From Scyliorhinus canicula (Eukaryota), in assembly GCF_902713615.1 (NCBI RefSeq), contig NC_052168.1:5952001-6016000 (forward strand): DNA of 64,000 nucleotides, read 5' to 3'. Under the pieces are notes generated by a model. That model worked only from the letters and a program-made list of their open reading frames with translations, had not been told where the DNA came from and made no database searches. The translations under genes were made by a program, and so were the position numbers. Positions 10,481-60,118 of the stretch are shown in pieces; the stretch's first letter is position 1, and every line of letters starts with the position of its first letter.

Positions 10481-12723
<2,243 letters not shown>

Positions 12724-21283: not shown

Positions 21284-21508
<225 letters not shown>

Positions 21509-25119: not shown

Positions 25120-28100
25120 ATGTCAGCTAATAAAGATCAGGAGAGCGTCCACGCAGCCGAGATGGACAAGGCCCCAGCTGCACCCTCCGAGGCTCCCTGC
25201 GCGGAACTCAAAACGGCCATGGAGAAATGGTGAGCTCATCAAGGGGCTTTAAGAAACATTCCTGTCCAATTGCAATTTTACGGGAGGCTTGCGAAGCGTC
25301 ATGGTAAAACGTATGGTTTTTCTTTACATAACTGAGTGCGGGGTTAAATGACAGAATCGCTTTGCAGTTAACGCGTCTGCCCAGTTCCAGCCGTGCAAAT
25401 GGCTTTGCCTGATTGACCTGACACCTCGCATAGCATCAACTCCAAATTAACCATTTCCGGGAGTCGGTGTGGAATTCCGATCAGGGTTATTGAGCCGTTA
25501 TTGTCCTTTCATTCACGCCACCTTACGCAAGAGGAGGGAGTCTCTTCAGCAAACTGGTAAATACCCATAACCTAGCACATTTGTAGCAACATAGGAAGCA
25601 CCCAGCGTTGGCAGTGAAACATCGCCACCCTCTCAAGTTTCTCCCGGATTCTAGGTTTTCTGCTGTCTTGAGCACCCCCTCCCCCCCAATTTTAAACGCC
25701 CCACCATTTGGCAGCCATGTTTTCAGTTGCCTGGGCCCCAACCTCCCTAATCCTCAACGCCTCTCCCTTCTCCTTTAAGATGCTACTTCGAGACACCCCC
25801 CCCCCCAACACCTCCTTATGTGGCCTGTCAAATTTCATTTGATAATGCTCCAATGAACCACGTTTTACTATGTCGGAGGTGCTATTTAAATGCAAGTTAC
25901 TGTTGTTGTGTTGGATGAGGAACTGAGAAAGTCCTCAATGCAGAATGGTTTGTCTCGGTTCAGCTCGACCCACATTTTTTACTTTGATAAATTTATTCGA
26001 TTGAAGGTTGAAGTCGAATTTGCTGAAGTAAGTTATCTTTTTAGATTCAACTACAAGCCGTTTGAACAGGCCCCGATGCAGAAGGGCATCCATTTTAGGT
26101 TAATGCAGAATCACGAGACCTAGCATTGAACTAGGAGGGGAGAAAAATCAGAAATGAATGATTCTGGTTTGGAAGGGTGGCACTACTGCCTCACAACCCC
26201 AGGGACCCTGTTTCAATTCCGGCCTCGGTTGACTGTGTGGAGTTTGCACTTTCTCCCCATGTGTGTGTGTGGGTTTCCTCCGGGTGCTCCGGTTTCCTCC
26301 CACAGTCCAAAGATGTGCAGTTTAGCTGGATTGGCCATGTTATATTGCCCCTTTGGTGTCCAAAAGGTTAGGTAGGGTTAGGGGGATAGGGTGGAGGAGT
26401 GGGCTTAAGTAGGGTGCTCTTTCCAAGGACCGGTGCCTACTCGATGGGCTGAATGGCCTCCTTCTGCACTGTAGGGATTCTGTGATTCTACGATGAAAGA
26501 GGGATGAACAAAATGATCCTGTAGAGAGGCACTGATGATATTTAAGTGAATTGAAGAAGTCAAACCCTGTTACAATGGGCAGGAGGAGGGTATATGTTAG
26601 TAACCAGCGAAATATAGGACTGGTTATGGAGGCATCAACTTGGTTAAACTTGAGGGCAGCACGGTGGCACAGTGGTTAGCATTGCAGCCTACGGCACCGA
26701 GGTCCCAGGTTCGAATCCCGGCCCTGGGTCACTGTCCGTGTGGAGTTTGCACATTCTCCCCGTGTCTGCGTGGGTTTCACCCCCACAACCCAAAGGATAT
26801 GCAGGGTAGGTGAATTGGCGACGCTAAATTGCCCCTTAATTGGAAAAAAAATAATTGGGTACTCTAAATTGAAAAAAAACTTGGTTAAACTTTTGAGCGA
26901 TATTCCAATGGTTAAGATAGAACATTAGCCACTGATTTAAACGGGGAGTGGGATGCGGCAGGATTGAGGTGCGCCTGTGTTTCTATGGAAGTACCAGTGA
27001 GATGGAACGAATTGACTCCTTGTCTAGACATACCTCGGGTGGTAAAGAACCAGTTTCCTTTGACATATTTCTATGTATCCTTTAATGTGTCCATAGGTTA
27101 TATGGCCTCTGGGAAGGGTAGGCCATGAGATACCTGCTTTGTCAGCAAACCCCCTCATGAATCCCTTTGATGGAGATAGGAAAGCACTTGGTGGTGGAAA
27201 TGTTCTTTAACGGGCATTTAATTGTTTCCATTAAGTTAGGACGTGGAGCGTTTGGTCAATAGCAGATAGGTGTCTCGAGGGGGACTGGCGTTTATATATC
27301 CCCTTTCACATCCTCAGAATGTTCCAACATGCTCAATAGCCAATTACCTCTGAAGTCCAGCCCCTAATGTTCTGTACAGGAATGTGGCAGCCAAAGTGCA
27401 CACAGCAAGATCCCGCACACAGCAAAACCTGTTAAATATGTCTTTGATGGCGTTGGTTGAGGAAGGAATGTTGATCTGGGCACCTCACCTGTTCTGCAGA
27501 TCGCTCAACGTCATCTTTTTCATACAGAGGACAGACAGGAATGTCAGTTTAATATTTCACCTGGAAGGCAATATCTCCCTCAATGCCATGTTCTCTCATT
27601 TAAAAAAAAATATTTGTTCACAGGATGTGGGCGTCTCTGGTTAGGTCAGCATTTATTGCCCATCCCAATTGCCCTCGAAGGCAGTGGTAATGAGCCGCCT
27701 TCTTAAACTGCTGCAATCCATGTGGTGTAGGTACACCCACAGTGCTGTTAGGGAGGGAGTTCCAGGATTTTGACCCAGCGACAGTGAATGAACGGCCGAT
27801 ATATTTCCAAGTCAGGATGGTGAGCGACTTGCAAGTGATGGGGTTCCCAGGTATCTGCTGTTCTTTTCCATCTAGATGGTAGAGGTCGTGGGTTTGGAAG
27901 GTGCTGTCGAAGGAGCCTTGGCGAGTTCCTGCAATGCATCTTGTAAATGGTACACACGGCTGCCACTGTTCGTCGGTGGTGGATGGAATTAATGTTTAAG
28001 GTGGTGGATGGGGTACCAATCAAGCGGGGCTATTTTGTCCTGGATGGTGTTGAGCTTCTTGAGTGTTGTTGGAGCTGCACTCATCCAGGCAAGTGGAGAG

Positions 28101-31100
28101 TATTCCATCACACTCCTGACTTGTGCCTTGTAGATGGTGGACAGGATTCGGAAAGCCAGGAGGCGAGTTAATCGCTCCTCTTGGTAATGTAATCCCAACT
28201 CTCAAATGAGTTCAATTTATTTTAATGGCCTTCCTGGCGAGTGGAGCCTCCCACAGTTGAATAGTCTAGGGACACTGGGCATTGTGAAGTAGTTGATATT
28301 TTATCATAGATATTTATCATAGTATTTAAAGTGCCGAAGGAGGCCACTCGGCCCATCAAGTCTGCACTGGCTCTTGGAAAGAGCACCCTACCCAAGCCCA
28401 CACCTCCACCCTATCCCCATAACCCAGTAACCCCACCCAACACTGAGGGCAATTTTGGACACTAAGGGCAATTTATCATGGTCAATCCACCTAACCCGCA
28501 CATCTTTGGACTGTGGGAGGAAACCGGAGCTCCCGGAGGAAACCCACGCACACACGGGGAGGATGTGCAGACTCCACACAGACAGTGACCCAAGCCGGGA
28601 ATCGAACCTGGGACCCTGGAGCTGTGAAGCAATTGTGCTATCCACAATGCTACCGTGCTGCCCTGGAAAGCGTGAATATCCTGTTTCTCCAACACAAAAT
28701 GAGTGTTTGTACCTTTTGACCTTGTATATATATATTTTTAAAAAAAATAAATTTAGAGTACCCAATTATTTTTTCTAATTAAGGGGCAATTTAGCATGGC
28801 CAATCCACCTACTCTGCACATTTTTGAGTTGTGGGGGCGAAACCCACGCAGACACGGGGAGAATGTGCAAACTCCACACGGACAGTGACCCAGAGCCGGG
28901 ATCGAACCTGGGACCTCAGCGCCGTGACGCAGCTGTGCTAACCGCTAGGCCACCGTGCTGCCCTTGTATATATTTTTTTATTACTGTTTTAATAAAAAGA
29001 TATGGCCAATCCAAAAAAAAAAATGCTCCATTCGGTAGTAACACCCTCAGACAAAACAATCGTCCCTCCGCCGGTTTTGTTGCGTGCTCGGCCTCTCTCT
29101 GCCCCGTGTTATTTTAACCTCAAGCTCTGCTCCCTAATTTGAGCTGACGGTGACTTTGCCTGCTTATCTGGCGTGGCCACACTCAGGGCAGGGATTGAGG
29201 GCTGTGCCACGGTGATGGGTAATTTGAACTGTCGAGCTGCGAGCTGACTCAGCTCCTGTCAACTGATGAGACCAGGGGAAGTATTTCTGGCTGGCTGCTG
29301 CCGTCTCTGCCTTGTATTTGTCTAATGAAGTCTGACTGATCATTAGTGCTGGGTTCCTGGTCACCCTGATCAATGTATGGAACATTTTTGTACAAATTCT
29401 CTGTGAGTATGCAATCGGAAAATGCTGCTTCCCCCTCGCACGCCAGTGTTTAACAGGCTTAGAACAAGCCTGACCTTGAATTTTAGTATGAATGTTGTGG
29501 TTAGCAAGTTAAGGAACATGAACGCTGGGGAATCGTATGCTCTCTGTTGGGGCTGCCCAGTTCAACACGGTTTATGCGAGGTGCTCCTTCCCACTGCTGA
29601 CCAGCCAAAGATGTCACATGTTTTAGCCGTGCACACTAATTTTAGGAGAAAATGCCTCACATGCATTCGCACAATGTGGGGGGCATGTACTGCATATGTA
29701 CATATCCACTTAAACATCTGTCACATTCAAACAAGGCAGTAAAACACTCGCCACCATCAAAAAAACAATCACAGGCACACTCTGTTTTTGTCTTATCACC
29801 ATCAAATAACAAATAACTGGACAACGTAGAAACGGTTGGAGGCCATTCAGCCCCTTACTTCAGTGCTTCAAATCCATTACTCCCACACTCGGCAGATAGC
29901 CCTTTCATACCCTTAGTAAAAAAAATCTCTTTTTAACATTTCAGACAAAGAAGATGGAAGCAGGTGGAGGCCATTCGGCCCTTCGAGTCTGCTCCACCAT
30001 TCGTGGCTGATCATCAAATTCAATACCCTGATCCCGCCTCGCCCCCACCAGCCCCTGATCCCTTTAGCCCCGAGAGCTAATCCCATCGGGAAATCACTCA
30101 ACGCTTTGGCCTCGACTACTTCCTATTGTGGCGCAGTGGTTAGCACTGGGACTGCGGCGCCGAGGTCCCAGGTTCGATCCCGGCTCTGGCTCACTGTCCG
30201 TGTGGAGTTTGCACATTCTGCCCGTGTTTGCGTGGGTTTCGCCCTCACAACCCAAAAGATTTGCAGAGTGGGTGGATTGGCCAGGCTAAATTGCCCCTTA
30301 ATTCGAAAAAAAAAAATTGGGTACTCTAAATATATTTTTTTTAAATGACTTCTTATTGACACCCACACTTCTGGTGACAGGGATGTGCTGAGCATTTGCA
30401 CATCAGGTGGCTCTCCTCCATAATACAGTAGAATAGGCACTTTTGGATGAATTTAGCCTGAAAATCCGGACTTATTGTACCCTTAAAGAGAAAAGGAAGA
30501 GAAAAAGAGCAATATGCCAACTAGTGGTGGCTCAGGAGGCCACAGCGAAGCCAGAAGCGATGGACAAGAGGGCAGGAGCAGCGAGCGAGCGAGTCGGCAG
30601 GCCCACGAGCTAAGGGGTCCCCGGCCACCCCCGAGAGAGGGAGACCGACGGCCCGGACAACGGGCCCCCCACCCCCCCCCCCCACCCCTTCAGACCCGGA
30701 GAGGGGTGGAAGACACAACAGCCCCAGAATCCACTCCTTTTTTCTGGAGGGGGAAAGAGTTCCAGATTTCTATGACCGTGTTTTATGAAAAGGATGCTGC
30801 CAGGTATCGCTCCTGAATGGCCTGGATATCACTTTCAGGTATTGTACCTGGATGCCCTCCTTGAGCAGATCTCAACCACATCTGGATTCCCCAAACCGCC
30901 CATATGCTGCTTGCGGTTATTGCTTGGGACGAGCGAACCATCCCCCCAACAGTTGTGCTTCAGCTCTGACCCTCGGGGCCTGCTACAGGACTCCGAATTT
31001 AGCTTTTAACAATCGTCCTGATTGCAAATGCCACTTTGGGTCATTTGTAGGCCTTCATGTCCAGAACCAGAAAGTTTCAGCAGGGCACCATCACCGCTGA

Positions 31101-34100
31101 ACCTGTCCACAGGCCCCAGGTCGCCCACCTCCACCCGAGTATTGCACTGTCAATAATTCAGGAAATTATGCTCCCCTTAGATTGGCTGATTTCCGTCTCA
31201 CCTTTAATCCCCTCAGCTCCATTAACTTTCAACCCAACTCTTTTTGTACATCCTGCTTCCCCCATGGACAGTGGAGACATAAGAACATAAGAACTAGGAG
31301 CAGGAGTAGGCCATCTGGCCCCTCGAGCCTGCTCCGCCATTCAATGAGATTGTGGCTGATCTTTTGTGGACTCAGCTCCACTTTCCGGCCCGAACACCAT
31401 AACCCTTAATCCCTTTATTCTTCAAAAAACCATCTATCTTTACCTTAAAAACATTTAATGAAGGAGCCTCAACTGCTTCACTGGGCAAGGAATTCCATAG
31501 ATTCACAACCCTTTGGGTGAAGAGGTTCCTCCTAAACTCAGTCCTAAATCTACTTCCCCTTATTTTGAGGCTATGCTCCCTCGTTCTGCTTTCACCCGCC
31601 AGTGGAAACAATCTGCCCGCATCTATCCTATCTATCCCTTCATAATTTTAAATGTTTCTATAAGATCCCCCCCTCATCCTTCTAAATTCCAACGAGTACA
31701 GTCCCAGTCTACTCAACCTCCTCGTAATCCAACCCCTTCAGCTCTGGGATTAGCCTAGTGAATCTCCTCTGCACACCCTCCAGTGCCAGTACGTCCTTTC
31801 TCAGGTAAGGAGACCAAAACTGCACACAATACTCCTGATGTGGCCTCACTAACACCTTATCCAATTGCAGCATAACCTCCCTAGTCTTAAACTCCATCCC
31901 TCTAGCAATGAAGGACAAAATTCCATTCGCCTTCTTAATCACCTGTTGCACCTGTAAACCAACTTTCTGTGACTCATGCACTAGCACACCCAGGCCTCTC
32001 TGCACAGCAGCATGCTTTAATATTTTATCGTTTAAATAATAATCCCGTTTGCTGTTATTCCTACCAAAATGGATAACCTCACATTTGTCAACATTGTATT
32101 CCATCTGCCAGACCCTAGCCCATTCACTTAACCTATCCAAATCCCTCTACAAACTTCCAGTATCCTCTGTACTTTTCGCTTTACCACTCATCTTAGTGTC
32201 ATCTGCCAACTTAGACACATTGCCCTTGGTCCCCAACTCTAAATCATCTATGTAAATTGTGAACAATTGTGGGCCCAACACGGATCCCTGAGGGACACCA
32301 CTAGCTACTGATTGCAAACCAGAGACATACCCATTATTCCCCACTCTTTGCTTTCTATTAATTAACCAATCCTCTATCCATGCTACTACTTTATCCTTAA
32401 TGCCATGCATCTTTATCTTATGCAGCAACCTTTTGTGTGGCACCTTGTCAAAGGCTTTCTGGAAATCCAGATATACATCCATTGGCTCCCCTTTATCTAC
32501 CACACTGGTAATGTCCTCAAAAAATTCCACTAAATTAGTTCGGCACGACCTGCCCTTTATGAACCCATGCTGCATCTACCCAATGGGACAATTTCTTTCC
32601 AGATGCCTCGCTATTTCTTCCTTGATGATAGATTCCAGCATCTTCCCTACTACTGAAGTTAAGCTCACTGGCCTATAATTTCCTGCTCTCTGCCTACCTC
32701 CTTTTTAAACAGTTTGCTCATTTCCAATCCACCGGGACCAACCCAGAGTCTAGTGAATTTTGGTAAATCATCACTAGTGCATCTGCAATTTCCCTAGCCA
32801 TCTCTTTTAGCACTCTGGGGTGCATTCCATCAGGGCCAGGAGACTTGTCTACCTTTAGCCCCATTAGCTTGCCCATCACTACCTCCTTAGTGATAACAAT
32901 CCTCTCAAGGTCCTCGCCTGTCCATAGCCTCATTTCTATCAGTCACTGGCATGTTATTTGTGTCTTCCACTGTGAAGACCGACCAAAAAACCTGTTCAGT
33001 TCCTCAGCCATTTCCTCATCTCCCATTATTAAAACTCCCTTCTCATCCTCTAAAGGGCCATATTACCTTAGCCACTCTTTTTGTTTTATATATTTGTAAA
33101 AACGTTTACTGTCTGATTTTTATATTCTGAGCAAGTTTTCTCTCATACTCTATCTTACTCTTCTTTATAGCATTTTTAGTAGCTTCTGTTGCCCCCTAAA
33201 GATTTCCCAGTCCTCTGGTCTCCCACCATCTTTGCCATTTTTATGCTTTTTCCTTCAATTTGATACTCTCCCTTATTTCCTTAGATATCCATGGTCGATT
33301 TTCCCTCTTTCTACCGTCCTTCCTTTTTATTGGTATTAACCTTTGCTGAGCACTGTGAAAAATCACTTGGAAGGTCCTCCACTGTTCCTCAACTGTTCCA
33401 CCATAAAGTCTTTGCTCCCAGTACATTAGGAAAATGTTTAGTCTCAGAGAATGGTTACAGCACAGAAGTCTATTCTCCCCACCGTGTGCATTACAGCCCT
33501 CTCTGCAAGAGGGTGAACACCTAACCCTAGTCCCTGTCAACATTCTAGGGGGTTGACATTGATCAGAAGGTGAACTGGACTAGTCATATAAATACTGTGG
33601 CTACCAGAGCAGGTCAAAGACTAGGAATCCTGCGGTGAGTAACTCACCTCCTTACCTCCCTCCCCCCCCCCCCCCCCCAAAGCCTGTCCACCACCTACAA
33701 GACACAAGTCAGGAGTGTGATGGAATACTCTCCACTTGCCTGGGTGAGCGCAGCTCCAACAACACTCAAGAAGCTCGACACCATCCAGGACAAAGCAGCC
33801 CAGTGATCGGTACCCAATCCGCCCCCTTCAACTTTCGCTCCCTCCGTCCGTTTCCCCCGCAGCCCGACAATTGTTCCCTCTTCAGATAATTAAAATTCTC
33901 TTTTAAAGGTCTCAATTGAACCTGCCTCCACCAGACTCTCAGGCCGTGCATTCCAGATCCTAGCCACTCGCTGCGTGAGAAAGCGTCTCCTGGTAGCCAC
34001 AGTTGCTGCTTTGCCAATCACCTTATATCGGTTTTCTTGGCTGTCAGGGTAGGGATCGGGATTGGCATGGAGCTTGGGCCTCGGAATCTCCGTCTAACTT

Positions 34101-34216
34101 TGGTGTTTTTTTTTATTTTAATGGTTTCCAGCATCACAGATAAAGGTGAAGAAAACTGCAAAGAAGCAACTCAGGCCTACAAAAACTGCATGAAAACATT
34201 AGGATTTAAAGTTTAA
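25120..34216 (+). CDS. COX17-like twin-CX9C (CHCH) small protein, 64 aa, lacking the Cu(I)-binding CC motif; coding exons 25120-25229 and 34132-34216
   Basis: Kozak CACCATG; donor TG|GTGAGC; acceptor with CTAAC branch, poly-T and CAG|C; spliced product [64 protein letters not shown] aligns to the COX17 C-terminus [28 protein letters not shown]. Confidence 0.88.
26174..26880 (+). mobile_element. Two V-SINEs (26174-26490 HE1-like; 26654-26878 short A-tail variant)
   Basis: Family signatures; located in intron 1 of the COX17-like gene. Confidence 0.8.
27620..28175 (-). mobile_element. CR1/L2-group LINE 3' fragment
   Basis: [37 protein letters not shown]; related pieces at 33540-33840, 34900-35410, 62950-63150. 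Confidence 0.75.
28305..28963 (-). mobile_element. Two adjacent V-SINEs (28305-28663, 28735-28963)
   Basis: Family signatures. Confidence 0.82.
31277..33420 (-). mobile_element. CR1/HER1-type LINE, ~2.1 kb of ORF2 (RT) with frameshifts and 3' tail
   Basis: [49 protein letters not shown] motifs; (CATAAGAA)n tail. Confidence 0.92.
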
Positions 34217-34321
34217 CAACAGCTGACTGGTGAGCGTCTATTCTACGATTAGTTTGGTGTCCGTGTTTGGGTAGTAACTATCCGTTGGGCCTAACCTGCT
34301 TCACCTGGGTATGTCCTGAAA

Positions 34322-34608
34322 TAATAATAATAATCTCTATTGTCGCAAGCAGGCTGACATTAACACTGCAATGAGGTTACTGTGACAAGCCCCTAGTCGC
34401 CACATTCCTGATCGGGTACACAAGAGTGAGAATTCAGAAATGTCCAAGCAGGTCTTTCGGGACTTGTGGGAGGAAACCGGAGGAAACCCACGCAGACACA
34501 GGGGGAGAACGTGCAGACTCCACACAGACAGTGACCCAAGCCGGGAATCGAACCTGGGACCTTGGCGCTGTGAAGCACCCGTGCTAACCACTGTGCTGCC
34601 GTGCCGCT
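34322..34608 (-). mobile_element. V-SINE (tail type 2)
   Basis: Family signature. Confidence 0.8.
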
Positions 34609-34830
34609 GCACCCTCAGCCAGTCAAAAGGTGGGAACAGTCAAGGAGGTAGACTTTCTCACATCCCCAACTGTGGTTGCATAATCCTGGGGAACTGATGC
34701 AGATGCTGTGCCGTCTATGCGCTGTCCCGTTACCTAACTCTAGTTGCACATATTCCTGGAGGTTTTATTGTGTGGCCTCCCACTTCTAACTGTTTCCACC
34801 CAGAACACCGGCAATTCCAACCCTCAGCCT

Positions 34831-34865
<35 letters not shown>

Positions 34866-35412
34866 AGAATGATTTTATAAAAAATGAATGATAGTGTTGA
34901 AGTTGGATATCAACATACTGGAGGTCACCATTGACCAGAGGCTTAACTGGACCAGCCATGTAAACACTGTGGCTACAAGAGCACATCAGTGGCTGGGGGT
35001 CCTGTGGCAAGAAACTGACATCCCGACTCCCCAAAGCCTGTCCGCCAACTGGCACAAAACAGGATTCTGATGGAATACTCTCCCCTTGCCTGGATGAGTG
35101 CAGCTCCAACACACAGAAAGCTTGACTATCCAGGACAAACAGCCCGCTTGATTGGCACCCCATCCGCCACCTTCAACATTCGCCCCCTTCACCATTGACA
35201 CACAGTACCAGCCGTCTGTACCATCGACAAGTGGCACTGCGGCAACTCACCAAAGCTCCTTCAACAGCACCTTCCAAACCCAAGACCTCTAGCACCTTGG
35301 GTGGCAGCTACGTAGGAACACCACCACCTGGAGGTTCCCGTCCAAGCCACTCGGCTCCCCGACTTGAAAATATATCACCGTTGTCGCTGAATCAAAATCC
35401 TGGAACTCTACA

Positions 35413-36639: not shown

Positions 36640-36675
<36 letters not shown>

Positions 36676-36839
36676 CCCACAATATATTTATCAATGGGGC
36701 AAACAATCCCTTCACAATGCCTGGAAACTTCAAGAAGAAATACTTTCTGTAGAATTATCCTCCATCTCTCTCCTCCGTTGGGTCAGGAAACTTGAGGAAA
36801 GCTTGGCTGATACAAGCAATCACTCGCCCTCGCATCAGT

Positions 36840-38348: not shown

Positions 38349-38460
38349 GTATCTGCATCTCTGGGCTGCCCATTTCATGACCGGCCCTTCTTCCAAGCAT
38401 CTCCGTTTCCCCATGACCTCCCACTCACTAATAAACCTCCTCCACGGTGAATAATCCACC
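38349..38460 (+). other. Putative non-coding terminal exon (3'UTR) of the COX17-like gene
   Basis: Exon 2 has donor CTG|GTGAGC at 34229/34230, 13 nt after the stop; strong acceptor TTGTTTGTTTCCTCCTACAG|G at 38348/38349; AATAAA 38430-38435 followed by a GU/U-rich tract. Confidence 0.65.
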
Positions 38461-39429: not shown

Positions 39430-39433
39430 AAAT

Positions 39434-50100: not shown

Positions 50101-52327
50101 GGAAAAGTTGGGGAGAGGCTGGAGTTGTTCTCCCTGGACAGAGAAGCGGAGGGGTGTTTTGATTGAGATGTGTGTGTGGTGAATGTGATTCACACCATAT
50201 ATAGTTGCCAATATCACTCCATGTATATATGTTCGTTATCTACCCATTGCAAGTGCAGTTGCACTATCCGACCACCAGGGGGAGTCGCTCTGGGAGTACG
50301 CGAGAGTTTGTACTGGGCTCCTCCCCCTGGGACCGATGTATAAAGATCAGTGCCTTAGAGCCAGCCTGCCATTTCACCTGAAGCTCAACGACGAATAGGC
50401 TGGCTCTGTTGTAAGTGTATTAAAGCCTCTGTTCAGATCCAACTACACGTGTTCGCTGAATTGATGGTTCCATCAATGTGCAAAATGTTGAGGTTAGAGA
50501 GGAAGGGAAGGGACTGTTTCCTTTAGCAGAGGGGGGTTTTGGAAGTCACTACCTCACAGGGTGGTAGAGGCAGAAACCCTCAACTCGTTCCAAAGGTGTC
50601 GGGATGTGCGCCGTAGGGTCGGTAACCGGCAGGGCAACGGACCAAACGCTGGAATCATGCCGGGTGGCTCGTTCTTCAGCCGGCGCAGATACGATGGGCC
50701 GAGTGCCATAAACTGTCTACGATTGGACATGATTATACCGAAGAACCAGGTGCGTTCCCCACACTCTCTATTTACCTCTCGACTAAAATCACTTCACCAG
50801 AAATCTGGTTGTGGGAACTTGCTGTGCGCTAATTGGTTGCTGAATTTCCTGCAGTACAACCGCACTTCCAAAAAAATACTTCATTGACTGGAAAGCACTT
50901 TTTTGGGACATCCAGGAGTCACGGACAGCGCTGTACAAATCCAAGTCTTTCTTTCTCGAGATCCCAACATCAGACAGCACGTCGCAAGTTCTGCGCGACT
51001 GCCCCGACACCGACCGGCGGTAACTTAAGACATGGAAACACGAACAGGCAAAGGCGGGCAAACAGAACCCGTCCGTTCAGAAGCGGCTCGGCTGTCGGTG
51101 GGACAAGTTGTCTTGGCAACCCTGCACCAACAGGTTCCCAGGCAACCTGCGCCAGACACGAGGTGCGACCAATCGGTTCAGATACTCACTGGACAGTTCG
51201 TCAGTCAGGTTGAGGCCAAGTTCGTCCAGCACTTGAGACACAATCGCATCACTGCAGAGGCAAAACAAAAATCAGTCGGCGCGTCCAACACAAGCCACTC
51301 TGCCATTTTCTCTTCCGCAATCAATAGGAGAGACTGACCATTTAGGGGATAGACGGAGGTGGGGATTCGACTTTCTAGGGAGTTGGGGGCCAGAAGAGGA
51401 GAAAGAACATAGAACATGGAACATAGAACATTACAGCGTAGTACAGGCCCTTCGGCCCTCGATGTTGCACCGACCTGTGAAACCCCTCTAAAGTCCATCT
51501 ACACTATTCCCTTATCGTCCATATGTCTATCCAATGACCATTTGAATGCGTTTAGTGTTGGCGAGTCCACTACTGTTGCAGGCAGGGCATTCCACGCCCC
51601 TACTACTCTGAGTAAAGAACCTACCTCTGACATCTGTCCTCTATCTATCTCCCCTCAATTTAAAGCTATGTCCCCTCGTGCTAGACATCACCATCCGAGG
51701 AAAAAGGCTCTTGATGTCCACCCTATCTAATCCTCTGATCATCTTGTATGCCTCAATTAAGTCACCTCTTAACCTTCTTCTCTCTAACGAAAACAAGCTC
51801 AAGTCCCTCAGCCTTTCCTCGTAAGATCTTCCCTCCATACCAGGCAACATCCTGGTAAATCTCCTCTGTACCCTTTCCAATGCTTCCACATCCTTCCTAT
51901 AATGTGGCGACCAGAACTGCACGCAATACTCCAAATGCGGCCGCACCAGAGTTTTGTACAACTACAACATGACCTCATGGCTCCGAAACTCAATTCCTCT
52001 ACCAATAAAAGCTAACACACCGTACGCCTTCTTAACAACCCTCTCAACCTCTCCCTCTCTCAAAGTACCCAACAGCATCCTGTGGGAGAGGGTTGCCGAT
52101 TCCAACTACATTTGTGCTTCCTAAGGGCAGCACGGTGGCGCAGTGAGTAGCACTGCTGCCTCACGGCGCCGAGGTCCCAGGTTCGATCCCGGCTCTGGGT
52201 CACTGTCCGTGTGGAGTTTGCACATTCTCCCCGTGTTTGCGTGGGTTTCGCCCCCACAACCCAGAAAGGTGCAAGCTAGGTGGATTGGCCACTCTAAATT
52301 GCCCCTTAATTGGAAAAATGATTGGGT

Positions 52328-52358
<31 letters not shown>

Positions 52359-55300
52359 TGTTGTGCTTCCTGGCATCGCACACCCCCCTCCCCTGATCGG
52401 TCTGGCTCTAGTTTTAAGGTTTTGCCCCTCGTTCTGGGTTCTCCCACCAGGGTGAAATAGTTTCCTCGCTCCTTCAATCACCATAGCCAGGTCAGCTTAG
52501 TCTTCCTGTACTCGAGGGAACACAAGCCCAATCTGCGCAGTCTGTCATTGTTCCTTCCTTTCCGATCCAGTATCCATTTGCACTTCAAAACCCCCTCACT
52601 TCAAACCCAATACATCCTGCAATAATTACAGCACAGGGGGGAGCCATTCACCCCATCGTCTTCATGCCAGCTCTCTGCAAGAGCTACTCAGCTGGCACCA
52701 CACCCCTCCGCCCCTGGCCTTTTCTCCTAGACCTGTTATTTCTTTCCTTTCAAGTGCTTATCCTAGTCCTTGTCGAGAGTCAACATTTATTTTTTATAAA
52801 TTTAGAGTACCCAATTCTTGTTTATCCAATTAAGGGGCAATTTAGCGTGGCCAATCTACCTATCCTGCACATCTTTGGGTTGCGGGGGTGAGACCCACGC
52901 AGACATGGTGGGAATGCGCAAACTCCACACGGACAGTGACCCAGAGCCGGGACCGAACCTGGGACCTCAGTGCTGTGAGGCAGCAGTGCTAGCCACTGTG
53001 CCACCGTGCTGCCCACCACCCCCTCATGATTTTAAACACATCTATCAGCTCTCCCCTCTTCTCTAAATTGAACAGCAGCTTATATCTGGAACCATTCTCG
53101 TAAATCCTTTTTTTATCCTCCCCAAGCTGTGGGCCTGTACTCATTGGAGTTCAGAAGAATGAGGGGTAACATTATTGAGACATACAGGATTCTCGGGGGG
53201 GCTTGACAGGGTCGATGCTGAGAGGTTGTTTCCCCTTGTGGGAGAGTCTAGGACCAGAGGGCATCATCTCAGAGTGAGGGAGTCACCCATTTAAGGCAGA
53301 GATGAGGAGGAATTTCTTCAACTCTGTGGGTAGTGAATCTGTGGAATTCTTTACCGCAGAGAGCTGTAGAGGCTGGGACGTTAAGCATGTTCAAGGCTGA
53401 GATAGACAGATTTTTAAATCAGCAAAGGGAATCAAGGGTGACGTGGAGATGGTGGCGTTGGACTGGGGTGAGTACAGTAAGAAATCTTACAACACCAGGT
53501 TAAAGACCAACAGGTTTCACTAGCGAATCACTAGCTTTCAGAGTGTAGCTCCTTCCTCAGGTGAATGGGGATAAGGGGGGGAAAGTGGAGTTGAGGATTA
53601 TCACGTCGGATCAGTCATGATCTCGTTGAATAGTGGAGCAGACTCAATGGGCTGAATGGCCTTCATCTGCTCTCAAATCTTATGGTCTTAATCGGACACA
53701 ATACTCCAGTTAAGGGCCAAAGCTACTTCCTTACTTTATACCTCTATTTCTAAAGCCCAAGATCCCTTATGCTTTATTAAACGACTTCCTCAACCTGCCC
53801 TGCCACCTTCAAGGAATTTCACGCCTGTCCTTCCTGATGTGATAACAATGCCCCAAATGGGACTCTCCCCCCCACCCCCCCCCCCCCCCCCCCCCCCCTC
53901 CTCCCGAGCTCGGTACAGCTGCAACATCATAGTGATGTGCGCTTGACTGTTCTCAGTGAAGCTGCCCCATTGTTGGGCGAACCCCAATCGCAGGTCATCT
54001 GAAAACCAACAGGTGTGAATGAACATAATGAGGAAATGAACAGAAAGGCATGATGGGTAGTTAGGCCAAGTCTGGAGTAAAATCTTACTACAGTAGAATA
54101 AGGAGTTAGGTTAGCGGACTTTTAAACATCTCTAGCTTAGGCTGGAGAAAATGGGTAGCAGTCTGTGGTTGCCTGTAACTGAGACTCCATCATAGGCAGA
54201 TATCTGATCCAAACGGAATGAACGCTGCCCCCCCCCCCCCCCCCCATCACTCTGCGCGGTGGAGAATTGCAGTGAGACAGCCTCGTCGCAGCACAGATGA
54301 CCTCAAACAAATTTACAAACCATCTCCCACCGGCCAAAACCAGTGTCTAGTTCATCCAGCCAGTTCTGCCCACTCCTGATATTCTACCCCCCACTTCTCC
54401 TGAAGCACGGACTCGCCCTGTGGCGTGTTCCCCAGACTCCCGCACTCGGGTATCTCACCCAATCCCACACGCAGACCAGTTTGGGAAGGCTACAATCCGA
54501 CAGACAAACCCCATCCTGATCGTGCCCACAAACATCAGCTTCCACCTGTGTTCTTTAACTGGGCAGGAAACCATTCCACTGAATAGTGAATCAATGGTGG
54601 AGGACACGGAGAGCAGGGCCCAAGGGGAAAACAGGAGATACTGGGAGAATCGTCTCTCACGAACATCCGGAGGGTTAATAGGACGGAAAACAGCGCTGGA
54701 AGCCAGATCTACAATAACTTAAAAAATGAAATATATGGGTCAAGGGTGTAATTTGCTGATTCCTTCAGAGCACAAGTACAGGGGAGATGGGATGAATGGC
54801 CTGCATTTCTGCTGCAAGGCATTTTTATTCTATGACCTTTGCAAGTAACATGCAAACAGTAGGTGGCTGTTACCTACGGGAGCTGCGAGATGTGCCTGGC
54901 ACAAGTAATTCACATCACAGTAAGCTCCCGGACCTCCTGCTAGCCAGTGTGAATCATCAGCTCGAGTCACCAGCACGTCACGGAGCTGGTTCCGGAGTCC
55001 GGCACAGAATGGGAGCAGAGATTTGGGAAGCGGTCACACGCCAGGGCTCAGGATAAGGATAAGGACGTGACCGTGAATGGTGGAACAGGCTTGAGGCGTT
55101 GAACGGGCTGCATGTGTGTCCTTCATGATGTTAATTATATTGTTAAGATATAATTTTATTGTTAAGACAGCTGAAGGGCAGCCAGGTTCGATTCCCGGCT
55201 TGGATCACTGTCTGTGCGGAGTCTGCACGTTCTCCCCGTGTCTGCGTGGGTTTCCTCCGGGTGCTCCGGTTTCCTCCCACAAGTCCCGAAAGACGTGTTT

Positions 55301-58300
55301 GTTAAGTGAATTGGGCATTCTGAATTCTCCCTCCGTGTACCCGAATAGGCGCCGGAGTGTGGCGACTCGGGATTTTCACAGTAACTTCATCGCAGTGTTA
55401 ATGTAAGCCTACTTGTGACAATAATAAAGATTTTTTTTTTTAAATTTAGAGTATCTAATTCATTTTTTCCAATTAAGGGGCAATTTAGCGCGGCCAATCC
55501 ACCTAGCTTGCACATTTTTTTGGGTTGTGGGGGTGAAACCCACGCAAACACAGGGAGAATGTGCAAACTCCACACGGACAGTGACCCAGAGCTGGGATCG
55601 AACCTGGGACCTCTGCGACACTTGCCTTCTACAATAATAAAGATTATAATTAAGTAATCAGAGCACTTGTAAAGAGTGACTGTGCCTTCCGTGACTGGTG
55701 GGTACCACAGTTCTTCATCAGTCCCCATAATAACATTTTCATTTGATTGGACAAGTTTCCTTTAAGATTGTGTCTTTTGTTACACTGTCTCTTTAAGGGG
55801 CGATTGCTTTAATTTAACTGGTTAGTTTGATTAATTTGTCCAGTTTATTTTATGGGTTACTGAAAAGAATATAGCCAAGTTCCACACACGGGTACGGCCT
55901 CAACCGGGACCTGGGATTCATGTCACATTAAATTCACCCCCCATCATCTGGCCCGGGCTTGCAAAATCCTACCAACTGTCCTGGTTTTAGACAATTCACC
56001 CCTCTTTAACCTGTGATTATCCCTCTCTCTGGATCGGTCAAGACTTAATTACCTGCAAATGCTCGCATTCAAAGTATCGTCTTGCATCTTTGAATTTGTC
56101 TATATAAATCTTTCTGGAACACACCTCTTCATTCACCTGAGGAAGGAGCAGTGCTCCGAAAGTTCGTGTTTGAAACAAACCTGTTGGACTTTAACCTGGT
56201 GTTGTCAGACCTCTTACAAAAAAAATAGAGAAAGACTACGCCTTCCATGTGGGCAATGCAGCGGCTGGAGCGTATCATTGGCTCCCAAAACAACACTTTG
56301 TTTTAGTTTAAGTTTCCTTTAAATCCTGATCAGGATTGCTGGGACACTGGATGAGTTGGGAGGAGACAGACATTACGCAAGGTTGCATTCTGTAACAAAG
56401 GAACTACCGCAAAAAGGACAGGCGTCTGGTTTTATACTTCAACACCTCGTATGGGATACACTTCTCATTGTATTGCTCCGGATCCCATTTCCCCAACACC
56501 CACTGTGGGGTATCCTTCACTGACCTCTCTTCCTCGTCATCTTCGTCGCCCATGGCATCATCAATGGCGTCATTCATCATTTCCTCCTTCATGTCCATGA
56601 TCTCCGACTGCTTCTCAAACTCCATCATGATCTTCTGAATCTGAGGCAGTTTCAACTGCAACATGGGAGAACAGGATTCGGGAGGGAATAAAGGTCAGTA
56701 GCTCTCGTGCAGGAGGAAATCCGGGTACCCCAAGTAGCGATCACAAACAGCGTTTGGTCTAAATATGTGGTCGAAAACACGTGTCATCCCTACAGTTCCT
56801 CCCAAAAGCAGAAAGCAGTGATCTTAAGCTTTGGCTACAAGTACAGGATAACTAAAGCCCCTGGTCAAAAATAAATAGTGCAAATCGCGCATTCTGAAAC
56901 GGAAGGCTAAATGAACGCTGGTTACTGGAATAAACAATATTACCAATCACAACATCTGAAGAGAAAAGGCAGTTAATTTATCCCATCCTTTCCCTTTCTA
57001 GATGGATGGAATGCTGGTTAGCAGAGAGGAAGCAAAAAGTTGGAATAAATGGGTCTTTTGCTGATTGACAGACCAGTGACTAGTGGGATAGTGATGCATG
57101 GATCGGTGTCTGGACCCCATCTGTTCACATTATATATTAATGATTTGGACGAGGGAACTAAATGTGTTATCTCCAAATTTGCAGATGATACAAAGTTGGG
57201 TGGGAGGGCGAGTTGTGAGGAGGGTGCAGAGATGCTTCAGCGGGATTTGGACAGGGTGAGCGAGTGGCCATATGCATGGCAGATTCAGTATAATGTGGAT
57301 AAATGCGAGGTTATCCACGTTGGTCGCAAAAACAGGAAGGCAGATTATTATTTGATTGGGTATAAATTGAGAGAGGCGGATACTCAGCGAGACCTTGGTA
57401 TCCTCGTGCATCAGACGCTGAAAGTAAGCACGCAGGTACAGCAGGCAGTAAAGGAGGCAAATGGTAGGTTGTCCTTCATAGTGAGAGGATTTGAGTATAG
57501 GAACAGAGATATTTTACTGCAATTGTACAGGGCATTGGTGAGGCCACAGCTGGAGTATTGTGTGCAGTTTTGGGGTCCTTATCTGAGGAAGGATGTTCTT
57601 GCTATGGAGGGAGTGCAGCGAAGGTTTACCAGGCTGATTCCTGGGATGGCGGGACTGTCATATGAGGAGAGACTAAATTGGTTAGGATTATATTCATTGG
57701 AGTTTAGAGGAGATAGAGGGGATCTCATAGAAACTTATAAAATTCTAACAGGATTAGACAGGGGAGATTCAGAAACAATGTTCCCGATGGTGGGGGAGCC
57801 CAGAACCAGGGGTCATGGTTTGAGGATAAGGTGCTGAGATGAGGAGAAATTTCTTCACCCAGAGAATGGTGAATCTGTGGAATTCACTCCCAGACAGTAG
57901 TTGAGGCCAAAACGTTGTAGAATTTCAAGAAGGAATTAGATACAGCTCTTGGAGCTAAAGGGATACATGGTGGGAGAGGCGGGATCAGGATATTGAACTT
58001 GAGGATCAGCCACGATCATAATGATAGCCGAGGTAGGTTCTTTACTCAGAGAGTGGTTGGGGCGTGGAATGGACTGTCTGTTGTGAAAGTGGAGTCGGAC
58101 ACTTTAGGAACTTTCAAGCAGTTATTGGATAGGCACATGGAGCACATCAGAATGACAGGGAGTGGGATAGCTTGATCTTGATTTCGGACAAAGCTAGGCA
58201 CAACATCGCGGGCCGAAGGGCCTGTTCTGTTCTATGTAATAGTGGAACAGGCTCGAATGGCCACCGCCTGCTTGTCTTTTATGTATGTTTCTATGTAAAC

Positions 58301-60118
58301 GCTGATAAAATGTTTGAAAAATTCCCAGCATTTTTAAAAATTCACTCCAGGAGGTACTGAAATCCCTCAGCATCGCTGTAATCACCATGGGTCTCACAAC
58401 TCTGAACGTCCCGTTGCTATGATGCCTTGTACATGGCAGCAACCAAACCCATGGGCGAAAGATCCAGCTCTCTAATTCCTCTCCTGCAACACCCACTCTC
58501 TCACTACCCCCTCAGCCTACACTTGCTCACTCCAGCAGTAACAAAGGTATGGGCAGGCCCTATCTTACCTGCTGGTTCATGGTGGCCATGGCCTTAGTGA
58601 CACCCTTCATTGCCTGGGCCATGGTGTTGTTGGATTTCAGCGTCTGAATCTTCAGGGACACCGCCTGGATATTCGCCTTCATCATGATAAATTTCTTCAC
58701 GTAGCGCCGTGTTCGCACCAAGTCTTTCGCCATTATCTTAACTGCGTCCTAGGAGTTGGAAAAAAAAACCCAGAAAGGCTCATAAGCGAAGTCTAGAACT
58801 GCTCAGACAATCACCAGATTTACAGACACAGAAACAGGCCATTCAGCCCAAATAGTCCATGCTGTTATTTATACTCCACACGAGCCTCCTCCCTCTCTAT
58901 CAACCTATCTTCCTATTCCTTTCTCTCTCCTGTACCTCTTTGAACATCTGAAATAGGGGCAGAAATAGACCACTCCGCTGTGAGCCTCTCCACCTGCCAT
59001 TCAGTAAGTTCATGGCTGATGTGGTGTCAAGTTCTACATTCACATATACCCGTGATCCCCATCCCTAACAAGAATCTATCTCTGCCTTAAACATACCCAA
59101 TGACCCCGGCCTCCACCGCCTTCTGAAACACAGGTCCAAAGTCACACAACCCTCCGAGAAATAATTTCTCCTCATCTCGGTCCTGAAAGGGCGACCCCTA
59201 ATTTTAAAACCGTGCCCTCTGTTTCTGGACTCACCCACAAGAGGAAACATAATTTCCACGTCCGCCTTGTCAAGGTCGTTCAGGATAATATGCACTTCAA
59301 TCAAATCATCCTTCACTCTTTTAAACTCCAGTGGAAGCAAAACCAATACGTCCAACCTTTCCTCACAAGACGACACGTTCATTCCAGGTATTAATTTAGT
59401 AAACCTCCTCTGAATTGCCTCCAATGCATAATAATAATAATAATCTTGATTGTCACAAGTAGGCTTACATTAACACTGCAATGAAGTTACTGTGAAAAGC
59501 CCCCAGTCGCCACATTCCGGCGCCTGTTCGGGTACACGGAGGGAGAATTCAGAATGTCCAATTCACCTAACAGGCATGTCTTTCGGGACTTGTGGGAGGA
59601 AACCGGAGCACCCGGAGGAAACCAACACAGACACGGGGAGAACGTGTAGACTCCGCACAGAGAGTGACCCAAGCCGGGAATCGTATCCTGGAGCCAGGCG
59701 CTGTGAAGCAACAGTGCTAACCACTGTGCTACCTTCCCGCCCATTGCTGAAATTTCTGTCTTGGTGGCTTAAAATATGAATCAAAAGAATTACGATTAGA
59801 CCTGGAACCACCATTGCAGATTACCCAAGGCACGTTCAACTCATTACAATGTAACTGTGACGCAAATCGCCATCTTGAATTCCCATACTCGAAAGTGGCA
59901 GGAAGCTACCTTCCACGAAAGAATTCCTCAACATCTTCTCTCACGCGTACCATCTGTCCTTGTTTAGCCATTTTCTTAATGTCGGCGATGATTTTCTTCT
60001 CCTGCTGCTCCAGTTTCTGCCGCTCCCGGTCCAGCTCCCGCATGGCCCGATTCAGGGCCCGCTGGTTCTGCCGGAGCATCTCCTCCGGGGTCTTTCTCCT
60101 ACCGAATATGGCATTCAT
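47135..60118 (-). CDS. CHMP2A: Charged multivesicular body protein 2A (ESCRT-III), 219 aa; coding exons 60118-59951, 58748-58569, 56655-56525, 51251-51190, 47253-47135
   Basis: MNAIFGRRKTPEEMLRQNQRALNRAMRELDRERQKLEQQEKKIIADIKKMAKQGQM/DAVKIMAKDLVRTRRYVKKF...MNQQ/LKLPQIQKIMMEFEKQSEIMDMKEEMMNDAIDDAMGDEDDEEES/DAIVSQVLDELGLNLTDELSN/LPSTG...DADADLEKRLKNLRKD*; phases consistent (660 nt total); C-terminal MIM1 motif. Confidence 0.97.
49715..49935. mobile_element. Penelope-like element terminal fragment forming a 90-bp-arm palindrome
   Basis: Arms 49754-49843 and 49846-49935, one mismatch; flanking duplication TACTGAATAGAAG (49702-49714 / 49931-49943); related pieces at 53440-53566 and 55890-56216. 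Confidence 0.75.
50173..50475 (+). mobile_element. Solo LTR (Gypsy-type) inserted into CR1
   Basis: TG...CATCA ends, 5-bp TSD ATGTG (50168-50172 / 50476-50480), TATAAA, ATTAAA; 3' end AATTGATGGT[T/A]CATCA shared with the LTR at 20926-21197. Confidence 0.8.
51405..52050 (-). mobile_element. CR1/HER1-type LINE 3' fragment
   Basis: [40 protein letters not shown]; (ACATAGA)n tail. Confidence 0.9.
52124..53013. mobile_element. Two short A-tail V-SINE variants (52124-52358 +, 52790-53013 -)
   Basis: Family signatures. Confidence 0.8.
53130..53690 (+). mobile_element. CR1 3' fragment with an inserted Penelope-like piece (53440-53566)
   Basis: [12 protein letters not shown]...SRTRGH motifs; AAGAAATCTTACAACACCAGGTTAAAG piece. 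Confidence 0.75.
55180..55615. mobile_element. Tail-to-tail V-SINE pair (55180-55430 +, 55432-55615 -)
   Basis: Family signatures. Confidence 0.78.
55890..56216 (+). mobile_element. Penelope-like element 3' fragment
   Basis: GLNRDLGFMSH-type ORF end followed by CACCTGAGGAAGGAGCAGTGCTCCGAAAG...GGTGTTG, shared with the 49715 hairpin. Confidence 0.65.
57000..58260 (+). mobile_element. CR1/HER1-type LINE ORF2 fragment (262-aa open stretch) with a second CR1 tail nested
   Basis: GSVSGPHLFTLYINDLD...KFADDTK...LYRALVRPQLEYCVQFW. Confidence 0.92.
58940..59742 (-). mobile_element. CR1 3' fragment (58940-59428) and V-SINE (59430-59742)
   Basis: EAIQRRFTKLIPG...; SINE family signature. Confidence 0.82.

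What the first reader, a model, noticed from the sequence alone, without database searches (positions are those of the whole stretch)
25120..60118. Ferritin - COX17-like - CHMP2A neighbourhood suggests a retained 2R ohnolog of COX17
Known: in human, CHMP2A and FTL lie on 19q13, while COX17 lies at 3q13.33 close to GSK3B. 3q13 and 19q13 share ohnolog pairs (GSK3B/GSK3A, CBLB/CBLC, NECTIN3/NECTIN2). Seen: a COX17-like gene that keeps COX17-style introns (so it is not a retrocopy) sits between an M/L-lineage-like ferritin cluster and CHMP2A. Inference: this may be the whole-genome-duplication sister of COX17, lost in mammals, kept in cartilaginous fish and neofunctionalised by loss of copper binding.
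Basis: inference. Interest (0 to 1): 0.72.

Follow-up and report, generated by a model that had tools for sequence, protein, structure and literature searches.

The report
Old copper-less COX17 copy beside CHMP2A
A catshark chromosome carries an unannotated, apparently expressed and very old duplicate of the mitochondrial copper chaperone gene COX17 that has lost its copper-binding cysteines and lies between a ferritin gene array and CHMP2A, but the data here cannot show that it dates from the vertebrate whole-genome duplications.

Summary
The window matches Scyliorhinus canicula gene for gene. It carries four tandem ferritin genes, then a COX17-like gene, then CHMP2A in convergent orientation.

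COX17L:
- It encodes 64 aa and passes Pfam COX17 (38.7 bits, cut-off 24.9).
- It keeps the twin CX9C cysteines but lacks both copper-ligand cysteines.
- It keeps both introns seen in whale shark, skate and tarpon COX17: one in phase 2 inside a Cys codon, one just after the stop. It is therefore a DNA-level duplicate, not a retrocopy.
- Many small, probably RNA, runs hold exon 1, and hold exon 2 only up to its donor.
- At synonymous sites it is as far from shark COX17 as tarpon COX17 is, so a recent duplication is rejected.

The 2R-ohnolog reading is not shown:
- The protein tree cannot place COX17L within vertebrates.
- No orthologue was found or could be searched for in other genomes.
- The ferritins are H-like rather than L-like, and highly multicopy in sharks.
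- CHMP2A is the only 19q13 marker in the window.
- By gene-map knowledge, FTL's part of 19q13 pairs with 11p rather than 3q13.

The scan had already noted this same stretch (s1-207373).

The parts
1..713 (+). 3' part (exons 3-4) of a ferritin gene, copy 1 of the tandem array
Evidence: Ferritin exon 3 and exon 4 translations at about 170-300 and 560-710.
4015..6431 (+). Ferritin gene, copy 2 (4 exons)
   Evidence: Exon translations found. The H/M-type ferroxidase residues are present on direct reading.
10481..12723 (+). Ferritin gene, copy 3 (4 exons)
   Evidence: Its length (2243 bp) and its distance to copy 4 (5263 bp) equal those of the 176-aa ferritin gene upstream of P0203 in S. canicula GCA_902713615.2.
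17986..21511 (+). Ferritin gene, copy 4, the last copy before COX17L; annotated product P0203 (174 aa)
   Evidence: The gene is 3526 bp long, the same as the P0203 gene in S. canicula. P0203 matches human ferritin H chain best (285.7 bits), then frog M (about 273), with no L chain in the top 60.
25090..25229 (+). COX17L exon 1 (CDS 25120-25229, 36 codons plus 2 bases; ATG in the context caccATGt); the true 5' end was not determined
   Evidence: Sequence read and translated. Eleven small runs hold all sampled words of 25090-25229 and seven hold 0.60. The donor TG|GTGAGC at 25230 is in phase 2 inside a Cys codon, as in canonical COX17.
25230..34131 (+). COX17L intron 1 (8.9 kb, phase 2), full of SINE and LINE fragments
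   Evidence: The homologous intron is 6.1 kb in whale shark, 4.4 kb in skate and 159 bp in tarpon.
34132..34229 (+). COX17L exon 2 (CDS 34132-34216, stop TAA, then 13 nt of 3'UTR before the donor CTG|GTGAGC)
   Evidence: Sixteen small runs from eight studies hold exactly 0.39 of the words of 34132-34336. That is the share expected (68 of 175 words) if transcripts stop at 34229. Exon 2 hits human COX17 2rn9 at E 1.6e-5.
38350..38455 (+). Predicted non-coding exon 3 of COX17L (3'UTR): acceptor cctacag|G, AATAAA at 38430
   Evidence: Prediction from sequence only. It is consistent with the conserved 3'UTR intron of COX17.
47135..60118 (-). CHMP2A, five coding exons: 60118-59951, 58748-58569, 56655-56525, 51251-51190, 47253-47135 (219 codons plus stop)
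   Evidence: Exon anchors and splice sites found. Exon 2 matches 7zcg_B, 'Charged multivesicular body protein 2a', at E 1.5e-28.

Best explanation
Gene and origin. COX17L is a real, transcribed, three-exon gene of Scyliorhinus canicula that is missing from the annotation. It arose by an ancient DNA-level duplication of the whole COX17 gene. The duplication may have been segmental or genome-wide; which one is unresolved.

Protein and likely function. The product keeps the four cysteines of the twin CX9C hairpin (C27, C37, C46, C56). It therefore most likely still folds as a CHCH domain and is trapped in the mitochondrial intermembrane space by the MIA40/CHCHD4 disulfide relay. It has lost both Cu(I)-ligand cysteines of the CCxC motif and the basic KKPLKP patch. 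Its pI falls to 5.3, against 8.2 for whale shark COX17. It therefore cannot hand copper to SCO1 or COX11 the way COX17 does. It is best read as a copper-independent offshoot of COX17 that purifying selection has kept.

Neighbourhood. Its position 3.6 kb after the last gene of a ferritin array, and convergent with CHMP2A, is real. That position does not by itself date the duplication.

Shown here: gene structure, homology, loss of the copper ligands, deep synonymous divergence, and k-mer evidence of transcripts.
Inferred: import route, fold, loss of chaperone function, and selection.
For: - Homology: Pfam COX17 at 38.7 bits against a 24.9 cut-off, matching profile positions 9-47 only. Exon 2 hits human COX17 2rn9.
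- Alignment with 35 animal COX17: all four CX9C cysteines are kept, the CC pair is replaced, and the otherwise near-invariant core is only about 50% identical. All 119 retrieved COX17 proteins have CCxC.
- Intron 1 has the same position and phase in whale shark, skate and tarpon COX17.
- The second intron lies just after the stop codon in all four genes.
- Age: at 18 degenerate codons with the same amino acid in all four genes, whale shark and skate share 16 codons. COX17L shares only 6-8 with any canonical gene, and shark versus tarpon share 10 (Fisher p = 0.0016).
- Selection: dN is about 0.29 with dS saturated. The ORF, the start, the stop position and both splice sites are intact. A random 64-codon frame stays open with p = 0.046.
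- Expression: runs of only 20-220 million letters, from at least 8 studies, hold exon 1. They hold exon 2 exactly up to the predicted donor and not the sequence beyond it.
- Not annotated: no gene is called in the 10 kb after ferritin copy 4 in GCA_902713615.2. No close relative turned up in the protein collections.
Against: - Only one sequence from one species is in hand. Selection is argued from an intact ORF and dN well below dS, not from orthologues.
- The runs are only guessed to be RNA, and they are kept as contigs.
- Exon 3 is only predicted.
- No structure could be predicted, because the remote tools refuse the spliced protein.
- The hydrophobic pair of the MIA40 docking helix (LI in COX17) is AT in COX17L, so import by MIA40 is plausible but not certain.
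- Synonymous dating rests on 18 codons and assumes similar mutation rates at the two loci.
Confidence: 0.75

Rival explanations
1. COX17L is the 2R whole-genome-duplication sister (ohnolog) of COX17. It sits on the 19q13-type paralogon, was lost in bony vertebrates and was retained in cartilaginous fish.
For: - The whole gene structure was copied, including both introns.
- Synonymous sites are saturated. COX17L is as far from elasmobranch COX17 as teleost COX17 is.
- COX17L groups with vertebrate COX17 against insect COX17 with 96/89 support.
- A tree with COX17L outside all canonical vertebrate COX17 is not rejected (AU p = 0.48).
- Its neighbour CHMP2A is a 19q13.43 gene in human (established gene map).
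- 3q13 and 19q13.3 do share four-fold families: NECTIN3/NECTIN2 and CADM2/CADM4.
Against: - There is only one 19q13 marker in the window.
- The ferritins are H-like, not L-like. They are highly multicopy and dispersed in sharks. The nearest Callorhinchus ferritins have a different neighbour and no COX17L.
- The cited ohnolog pairs lie at 19q13.2-13.32. FTL's segment pairs with 11p13-14. TRIM28, next to CHMP2A in human, has its paralogues on 1p13, 7q34 and 11p15 (my knowledge, not tested here).
- An unchecked note of this scan puts a '19q13-equivalent segment' on another piece of this genome.
- No orthologue is known in any other vertebrate.
- The best constrained tree actually puts COX17L with chondrichthyan COX17, though not significantly.
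Confidence: 0.25
2. COX17L is a small-scale (segmental) duplicate. It was made after 2R, on the chondrichthyan or elasmobranch stem and well before the shark-ray split. It then evolved fast after losing the copper site. Its position next to CHMP2A is incidental.
For: - COX17L is known only from a catshark.
- It shares the Lys after EENC with all nine chondrichthyan COX17, whereas other vertebrates mostly have G, T, Q, R or S there.
- Holding COX17L with chondrichthyan COX17 gives the highest likelihood found (+2.3 lnL, AU p = 0.68).
- The gene lies at the edge of a tandemly duplicating, repeat-rich array.
- The synteny argument for 2R is weak.
Against: - With the shark-skate rate of 2 changes in 18 codons, 11-12 changes would need far more time than the age of elasmobranchs. 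Even at an assumed 30% expected difference, p = 0.006. A higher local rate or more time is therefore needed.
- A random insertion next to a gene of a chromosome arm that partly pairs with 3q13 would be a coincidence.
- The shared Lys also occurs in two teleosts, so it is weak evidence.
Confidence: 0.45
3. COX17L is a decaying, merely transcribed duplicate (unitary pseudogene or non-coding RNA) with no protein function.
For: - It is not annotated in the S. canicula gene set.
- The functional copper ligands and the basic patch are lost.
- It sits on an extreme branch in the tree, and its composition differs from the family.
Against: - With saturated synonymous divergence, a neutral copy would not keep all of these: the ATG, the stop at the same codon, both splice sites, all four structural cysteines with exact x9 spacing, and 20 of 38 identical core residues.
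- Transcripts are seen in many runs.
Confidence: 0.1

Closest known systems
Canonical COX17 (cytochrome c oxidase copper chaperone, Pfam PF05051; human 2rn9, yeast 1u96)
   Same: - Length is about 64 aa.
- It has the twin CX9C hairpin.
- The C-terminal LGFK[IV] end is kept.
- The KGEENC turn is kept.
- It has the same two introns.
- It passes the Pfam gathering score.
   Different: - Both Cu(I)-ligand cysteines (CCxC) and the KKPLKP patch are gone.
- The core is about 50% identical, whereas COX17 is about 90% identical from insects to mammals.
- It is acidic rather than basic.
- It lies at a different locus. Canonical COX17 lies beside POPDC in tarpon and beside an HCN-type channel gene in skate.
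Human COX17 processed pseudogene (PDB 2l0y chain B is named as a COX17 pseudogene product)
   Same: It is a second COX17-derived locus in a vertebrate genome.
   Different: Processed copies lack introns. COX17L keeps both. It is also far more diverged and keeps an open frame.
Other twin-CX9C intermembrane-space proteins (Pfam CHCH, Cmc1, CX9C, Pet191)
   Same: It has the CX9C-CX9C architecture without a metal-ligand CC pair. A copper-independent structural or assembly role is the kind of function proposed here.
   Different: All of these score below their Pfam cut-offs on COX17L (19.3, 17.3, 15.2 and 11.8 bits). COX17 passes.
Metal-site-less derivatives of Cu/Zn superoxide dismutase (abstract of PMC13017621, seen)
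   Same: It shows the same evolutionary pattern: a cuproprotein paralogue that lost its metal site and was kept.
   Different: It is an unrelated fold and family, so this is only an analogy.

Membership tests
COX17 family (PF05051) | Sequence passes the curated family profile | tested here: met
   38.7 bits against the 24.9 cut-off, E 1.2e-9, matching profile positions 9-47 of 47.
COX17 family (PF05051) | Twin CX9C cysteines forming the CHCH hairpin | tested here: met
   C27-x9-C37 and C46-x9-C56 align with the four structural cysteines of 35 COX17 proteins.
COX17 family (PF05051) | CCxC motif supplying the two Cu(I) ligands (C23 and C24 in human, by established structural work on human Cox17) | tested here: not met
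   The two positions are not Cys in COX17L (…SEAPC…). All 119 retrieved COX17 proteins have CCxC. COX17L is therefore a homologue by descent but not a copper chaperone of the COX17 type.
COX17 family (PF05051) | Gene structure: phase-2 intron inside the second CX9C Cys codon, and an intron shortly after the stop codon | tested here: met
   The splice position and phase are identical in whale shark, skate and tarpon COX17 and in COX17L. A donor lies 13 nt after the stop in COX17L and 25-30 nt after it in COX17.
COX17 family (PF05051) | Intermembrane-space location, MIA40-dependent oxidation, copper delivery to SCO1 and COX11 | not testable with these tools
   This needs localisation, import and metal-binding assays.
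2R ohnolog pair (COX17 / COX17L) | The two copies lie on chromosome segments that share many other ohnolog pairs and descend from one ancestral linkage group | tested here: inconclusive
   The window holds only one usable marker, CHMP2A. Ferritin is H-like and multicopy. The nectin and CADM pairs link 3q13 to 19q13.3, but FTL's segment pairs with 11p. Chromosome-scale synteny could not be reached.
2R ohnolog pair (COX17 / COX17L) | The duplication node falls after the split from invertebrates and before the chondrichthyan-osteichthyan split | tested here: inconclusive
   COX17L groups with vertebrates against insects at 96/89. Inside vertebrates it is unresolved (AU p 0.68 and 0.48). Synonymous sites only show that the duplication is much older than the shark-ray split.
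2R ohnolog pair (COX17 / COX17L) | Orthologues of the extra copy exist in more than one deep gnathostome lineage | not testable with these tools
   No vertebrate genome search is offered. None was found among annotated proteins or in 10 fetched loci. None of those loci was shown to be the orthologous array end.
Processed retrocopy | No introns, poly(A) tail, flanking target-site duplications | tested here: not met
   There are two introns at the parental positions.
Ferritin L (or M/L) lineage, used as a marker for human FTL at 19q13.33 | Closest similarity to L or M chains rather than H chains | tested here: not met
   P0203 scores 285.7 bits against human H chain and about 273 against frog M. 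No L chain is in the best 60. Exon 2 alone scores M 72 against H 68 bits, which is not discriminating. Similarity is not orthology, so the lineage stays open.
CHMP2A (ESCRT-III, Snf7 family) | Near-identity to CHMP2A rather than CHMP2B | tested here: met
   Exon 2 has a single PDB hit, 7zcg_B 'Charged multivesicular body protein 2a', at E 1.5e-28. The full five-exon CDS has 219 codons.

The most novel reading that the evidence does not exclude
COX17L is a true 2R ohnolog of COX17. It survived only in cartilaginous fishes (or only in elasmobranchs) and was re-used as a copper-independent twin-CX9C protein of the mitochondrial intermembrane space. On this reading the universally single-copy COX17 did once have a vertebrate sister gene.
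Probability: 0.22. Interest if true: 0.6.

Novelty: new variant of a known kind. Interest (0 to 1): 0.42.

Why it matters
- COX17 is among the most conserved small proteins of animals. Its core is nearly invariant from ants to whales. It was single-copy in every proteome retrieved here.
- A long-lived paralogue that keeps the CHCH scaffold but drops the copper ligands is a natural separation-of-function allele. It could show what COX17 does apart from copper delivery, for example structural, redox or MICOS-linked roles.
- It would also add a member to the small set of MIA40 substrates.
- If the 2R origin were confirmed, it would be another gene kept by cartilaginous fish and lost by bony vertebrates.
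- Practically, the gene is missing from the catshark annotation and should be added.

Tried and rejected
- Word-indexed protein search with the spliced 64-aa protein found no candidate. This is a weak negative. Canonical shark COX17 shares the overlapping words of KGEENCK with COX17L and was still not returned.
It was not sent out again, so there is no structure prediction and no atlas search.
- The exhaustive search with exon 2 alone gave one COX17 (P0005, a model with the intron read through at the same site) and five repetitive long proteins, which I take to be spurious.
Great white shark and catshark returned no DNA because the files were too large. Callorhinchus, whale shark (three loci), zebra shark (two loci), sawfish, skate and tarpon loci were fetched. 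None holds a COX17L-like exon by tblastn or blastn. The ferritin loci were interior slices of large arrays or non-orthologous loci, so this does not show absence.
No junction reads were obtained. Later local comparisons stopped at 34400.
- Literature searches for a vertebrate COX17 paralogue or ohnolog found nothing relevant.
- A search for a UBE2M exon upstream of CHMP2A (60.1-64 kb) found only G-rich tandem repeats.
- Scan notes for GSK3A and TRIM28 in this genome do not exist.
- Rejected: retrocopy (introns present).
- Rejected: recent duplicate (synonymous saturation).
- Rejected: another CHCH family (all below their Pfam cut-offs).

Full report
**What is in the window**

The window is vertebrate DNA rich in shark SINEs and LINE fragments.

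It can be placed exactly. In Scyliorhinus canicula GCA_902713615.2 (record of 27,685,257 bp), the gene of ferritin P0203 is 3526 bp long. It lies 5263 bp after a 2243-bp ferritin gene. These are the dimensions of window copies 4 (17986-21511) and 3 (10481-12723). All sequencing runs that hold the stretch belong to one organism.

Four tandem ferritin genes occupy 1-21.5 kb on the + strand.

CHMP2A occupies 60118-47135 on the - strand. It has five coding exons. Its exon 2 has one PDB hit, 7zcg_B 'Charged multivesicular body protein 2a', at E 1.5e-28.

**The COX17-like gene**

An ATG at 25120 opens 36 codons that end in TG|GTGAGC. After 8.9 kb, a polypyrimidine tract and an AG are followed by C ATC ACA... 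and a TAA at 34214-34216. The spliced frame has 64 codons.

- It passes Pfam COX17 (38.7 bits, cut-off 24.9), matching profile positions 9-47 only. Every other CHCH-type family stays below its cut-off.
- Exon 2 alone finds human COX17 2rn9 at E 1.6e-5 and yeast Cox17.
- I aligned it with 35 COX17 proteins from insects, teleosts, amphibians, sauropsids, mammals and nine chondrichthyans. COX17L keeps the four CX9C cysteines, the KGEENC turn and the LGFK[IV] end.
- It has no cysteine at either position of the CC pair, and no KKPLKP patch.
- All 119 retrieved COX17 proteins carry CCxC.
- COX17L has pI 5.3 with 4 Cys. Whale shark COX17 has pI 8.2 with 6 Cys.

**Gene structure**

I fetched canonical COX17 loci of whale shark (L003), thorny skate (L005) and tarpon (L006) and solved their splice sites by exact reconstruction of the annotated proteins.

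- All three split the codon of the second CX9C cysteine after its second base: TG|gtaatg...cag|T in the two elasmobranchs, and TG|gtgagg...cag|C in tarpon. COX17L does the same: TG|gtgagc...cag|C.
- All three also have a strong donor 25-30 nt after the stop codon (GTGTG|GTGAGT or GTGTG|GTAAGT). COX17L has CTG|GTGAGC 13 nt after its stop.
- A candidate 3'UTR exon lies at 38350-38455, with acceptor cctacag|G and AATAAA at 38430.

The whole three-exon gene was therefore copied as DNA. The retrocopy alternative is excluded.

**Expression**

The query 34132-34336 is held at 0.67-0.78 by three large DNA-type runs. It is held at exactly 0.39 by sixteen runs of only 20-220 million letters, from eight studies.

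If transcripts end at the donor (34229), 68 of the 175 possible 31-mers lie inside the exon. That is 0.39.

Exon 1 (25090-25229) is held completely by eleven such runs and at 0.60 by seven.

Runs this small cannot repeatedly contain one locus of a multi-gigabase genome by chance. I therefore read them as RNA. The tool marks that as a guess.

**Age of the duplication**

The COX17 core is almost invariant across animals, so protein trees carry little signal.

- COX17L sits on an extreme branch.
- It groups with vertebrate COX17 against insect COX17 (96/89).
- Holding it with chondrichthyan COX17 is 2.3 lnL better than the free tree (AU p = 0.68).
- Holding it outside all canonical vertebrate COX17 is 0.16 lnL worse (AU p = 0.48).
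- Neither placement can be rejected.

Codons are more informative. I compared the 18 degenerate codons that encode the same residue in all four genes.

| Pair | Identical codons (of 18) |
|---|---|
| Whale shark vs skate COX17 | 16 |
| Whale shark vs tarpon COX17 | 10 |
| COX17L vs whale shark COX17 | 6 |
| COX17L vs skate COX17 | 7 |
| COX17L vs tarpon COX17 | 8 |

- 6/18 against 16/18 gives Fisher p = 0.0016.
- dS is saturated and dN is about 0.29.
- These data cannot separate a 2R date from a duplication on the chondrichthyan stem.
- COX17L shares the Lys after EENC with all chondrichthyan COX17. This is a weak hint toward the chondrichthyan stem.

**The synteny argument**

It is weaker than it looks.

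1. The ferritins are H-type by similarity. P0203 scores 285.7 bits against human H chain and about 273 against frog M, with no L chain in the best 60.
2. Ferritin genes are present in very many copies in sharks and lie on several chromosomes. Carcharodon hits lie on three different contigs and Heptranchias hits on four. Slices fetched from whale shark, zebra shark and sawfish were all interior parts of arrays.
3. The closest Callorhinchus ferritins form a pair followed by a matrix metalloproteinase gene. There is no COX17-like exon within 28 kb.
4. Only CHMP2A therefore ties the window to human 19q13.
5. The nectin and CADM families do show a 1q23 / 3q13-3p12 / 11q23 / 19q13.3 tetrad. However, FTL's part of 19q13.33 lies beside LHB-KCNA7, whose paralogous pair FSHB-KCNA4 is on 11p13-14. 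That FTL lies beside LHB, and that TRIM28 has its paralogues on 1p13, 7q34 and 11p15, are from my knowledge of the gene map and were not tested here. Human 19q13 is therefore not one paralogon.
6. An unchecked note of this scan places a '19q13-equivalent segment' on another piece of this genome.

**Distribution**

No close relative of COX17L appeared in the protein collections. None appeared in the 10 loci I could fetch.

Vertebrate genomes cannot be searched at the DNA level with these tools. 'Kept in cartilaginous fish' is therefore untested, and the gene is documented in one species.

No paper describing a vertebrate COX17 paralogue was found.

**Verdict**

The gene is best explained as an ancient, intron-retaining, expressed duplicate of COX17 that lost copper binding and remained under constraint.

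| Reading | Probability |
|---|---|
| 2R ohnolog | about 0.2-0.25 |
| Later segmental duplication on the chondrichthyan or elasmobranch stem | about 0.45 |
| Other or undecidable timings | the remainder |

The scan had already flagged the same stretch as a hidden COX17 paralogue (s1-207373). That note's end coordinate led me to the predicted 3'UTR exon.

Noticed in passing
window 10481-21511: The window can be identified as Scyliorhinus canicula GCA_902713615.2 (27.69-Mb record). Gene lengths of 2243 and 3526 bp and the 5263-bp spacer equal those around P0203. No gene is called in the 10 kb after copy 4, so COX17L is unannotated there.
   Followed up: yes
L003 7496-7530; L005 14628-14660; L006 10363-10400; window 34217-34235: COX17 of whale shark, skate and tarpon, and COX17L, all carry a splice donor 13-30 nt after the stop codon. 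This looks like a deeply conserved 3'UTR intron, close enough to the stop to escape nonsense-mediated decay by the usual 50-nt rule.
   Followed up: partly
window 20700-20950 (ferritin copy 4, exon 3): In copy 4 the start of exon 3 (…QKPEQ) and the rest (GLEAMQ…) lie in different frames, as if a short deletion had occurred. The annotated product P0203 is 174 aa, against 176 aa for its neighbour.
   Followed up: no
(L004, L007, L008, L009, L010): Ferritin H/M-type genes form very large tandem arrays in elasmobranchs. There are 3-5 copies per 20 kb slice in whale shark, zebra shark and sawfish. Clusters of up to 180 near-identical proteins occur in Heptranchias and Pristiophorus.
   Followed up: partly
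L005 1-1375 and L006 643-18524: In thorny skate, canonical COX17 lies next to an HCN-type channel gene (Ion_trans_N and cNMP_binding domains, 947 aa). In tarpon it lies between SKA3 and a POPDC gene, which matches the human COX17-POPDC2 adjacency.
   Followed up: no
window 60500-62400: A G-rich tandem repeat block of about 1.8 kb (GC 0.63, GC skew +0.44) lies directly upstream of the CHMP2A start. No UBE2M exon was found in 60.1-64 kb.
   Followed up: partly
window 31709-32575 (-) and 57049-57837 (+): LINE reverse-transcriptase ORF fragments lie inside the COX17L intron and inside a CHMP2A intron. Many copies of one SINE family occur throughout the window.
   Followed up: no
P0005: This is a 74-aa COX17 model from a short assembled contig. 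It reads through the intron at exactly the shared splice site (…RDAW…), which independently marks that intron position in another organism.
   Followed up: partly
They lie in a SINE just downstream of COX17L exon 2.
   Followed up: no
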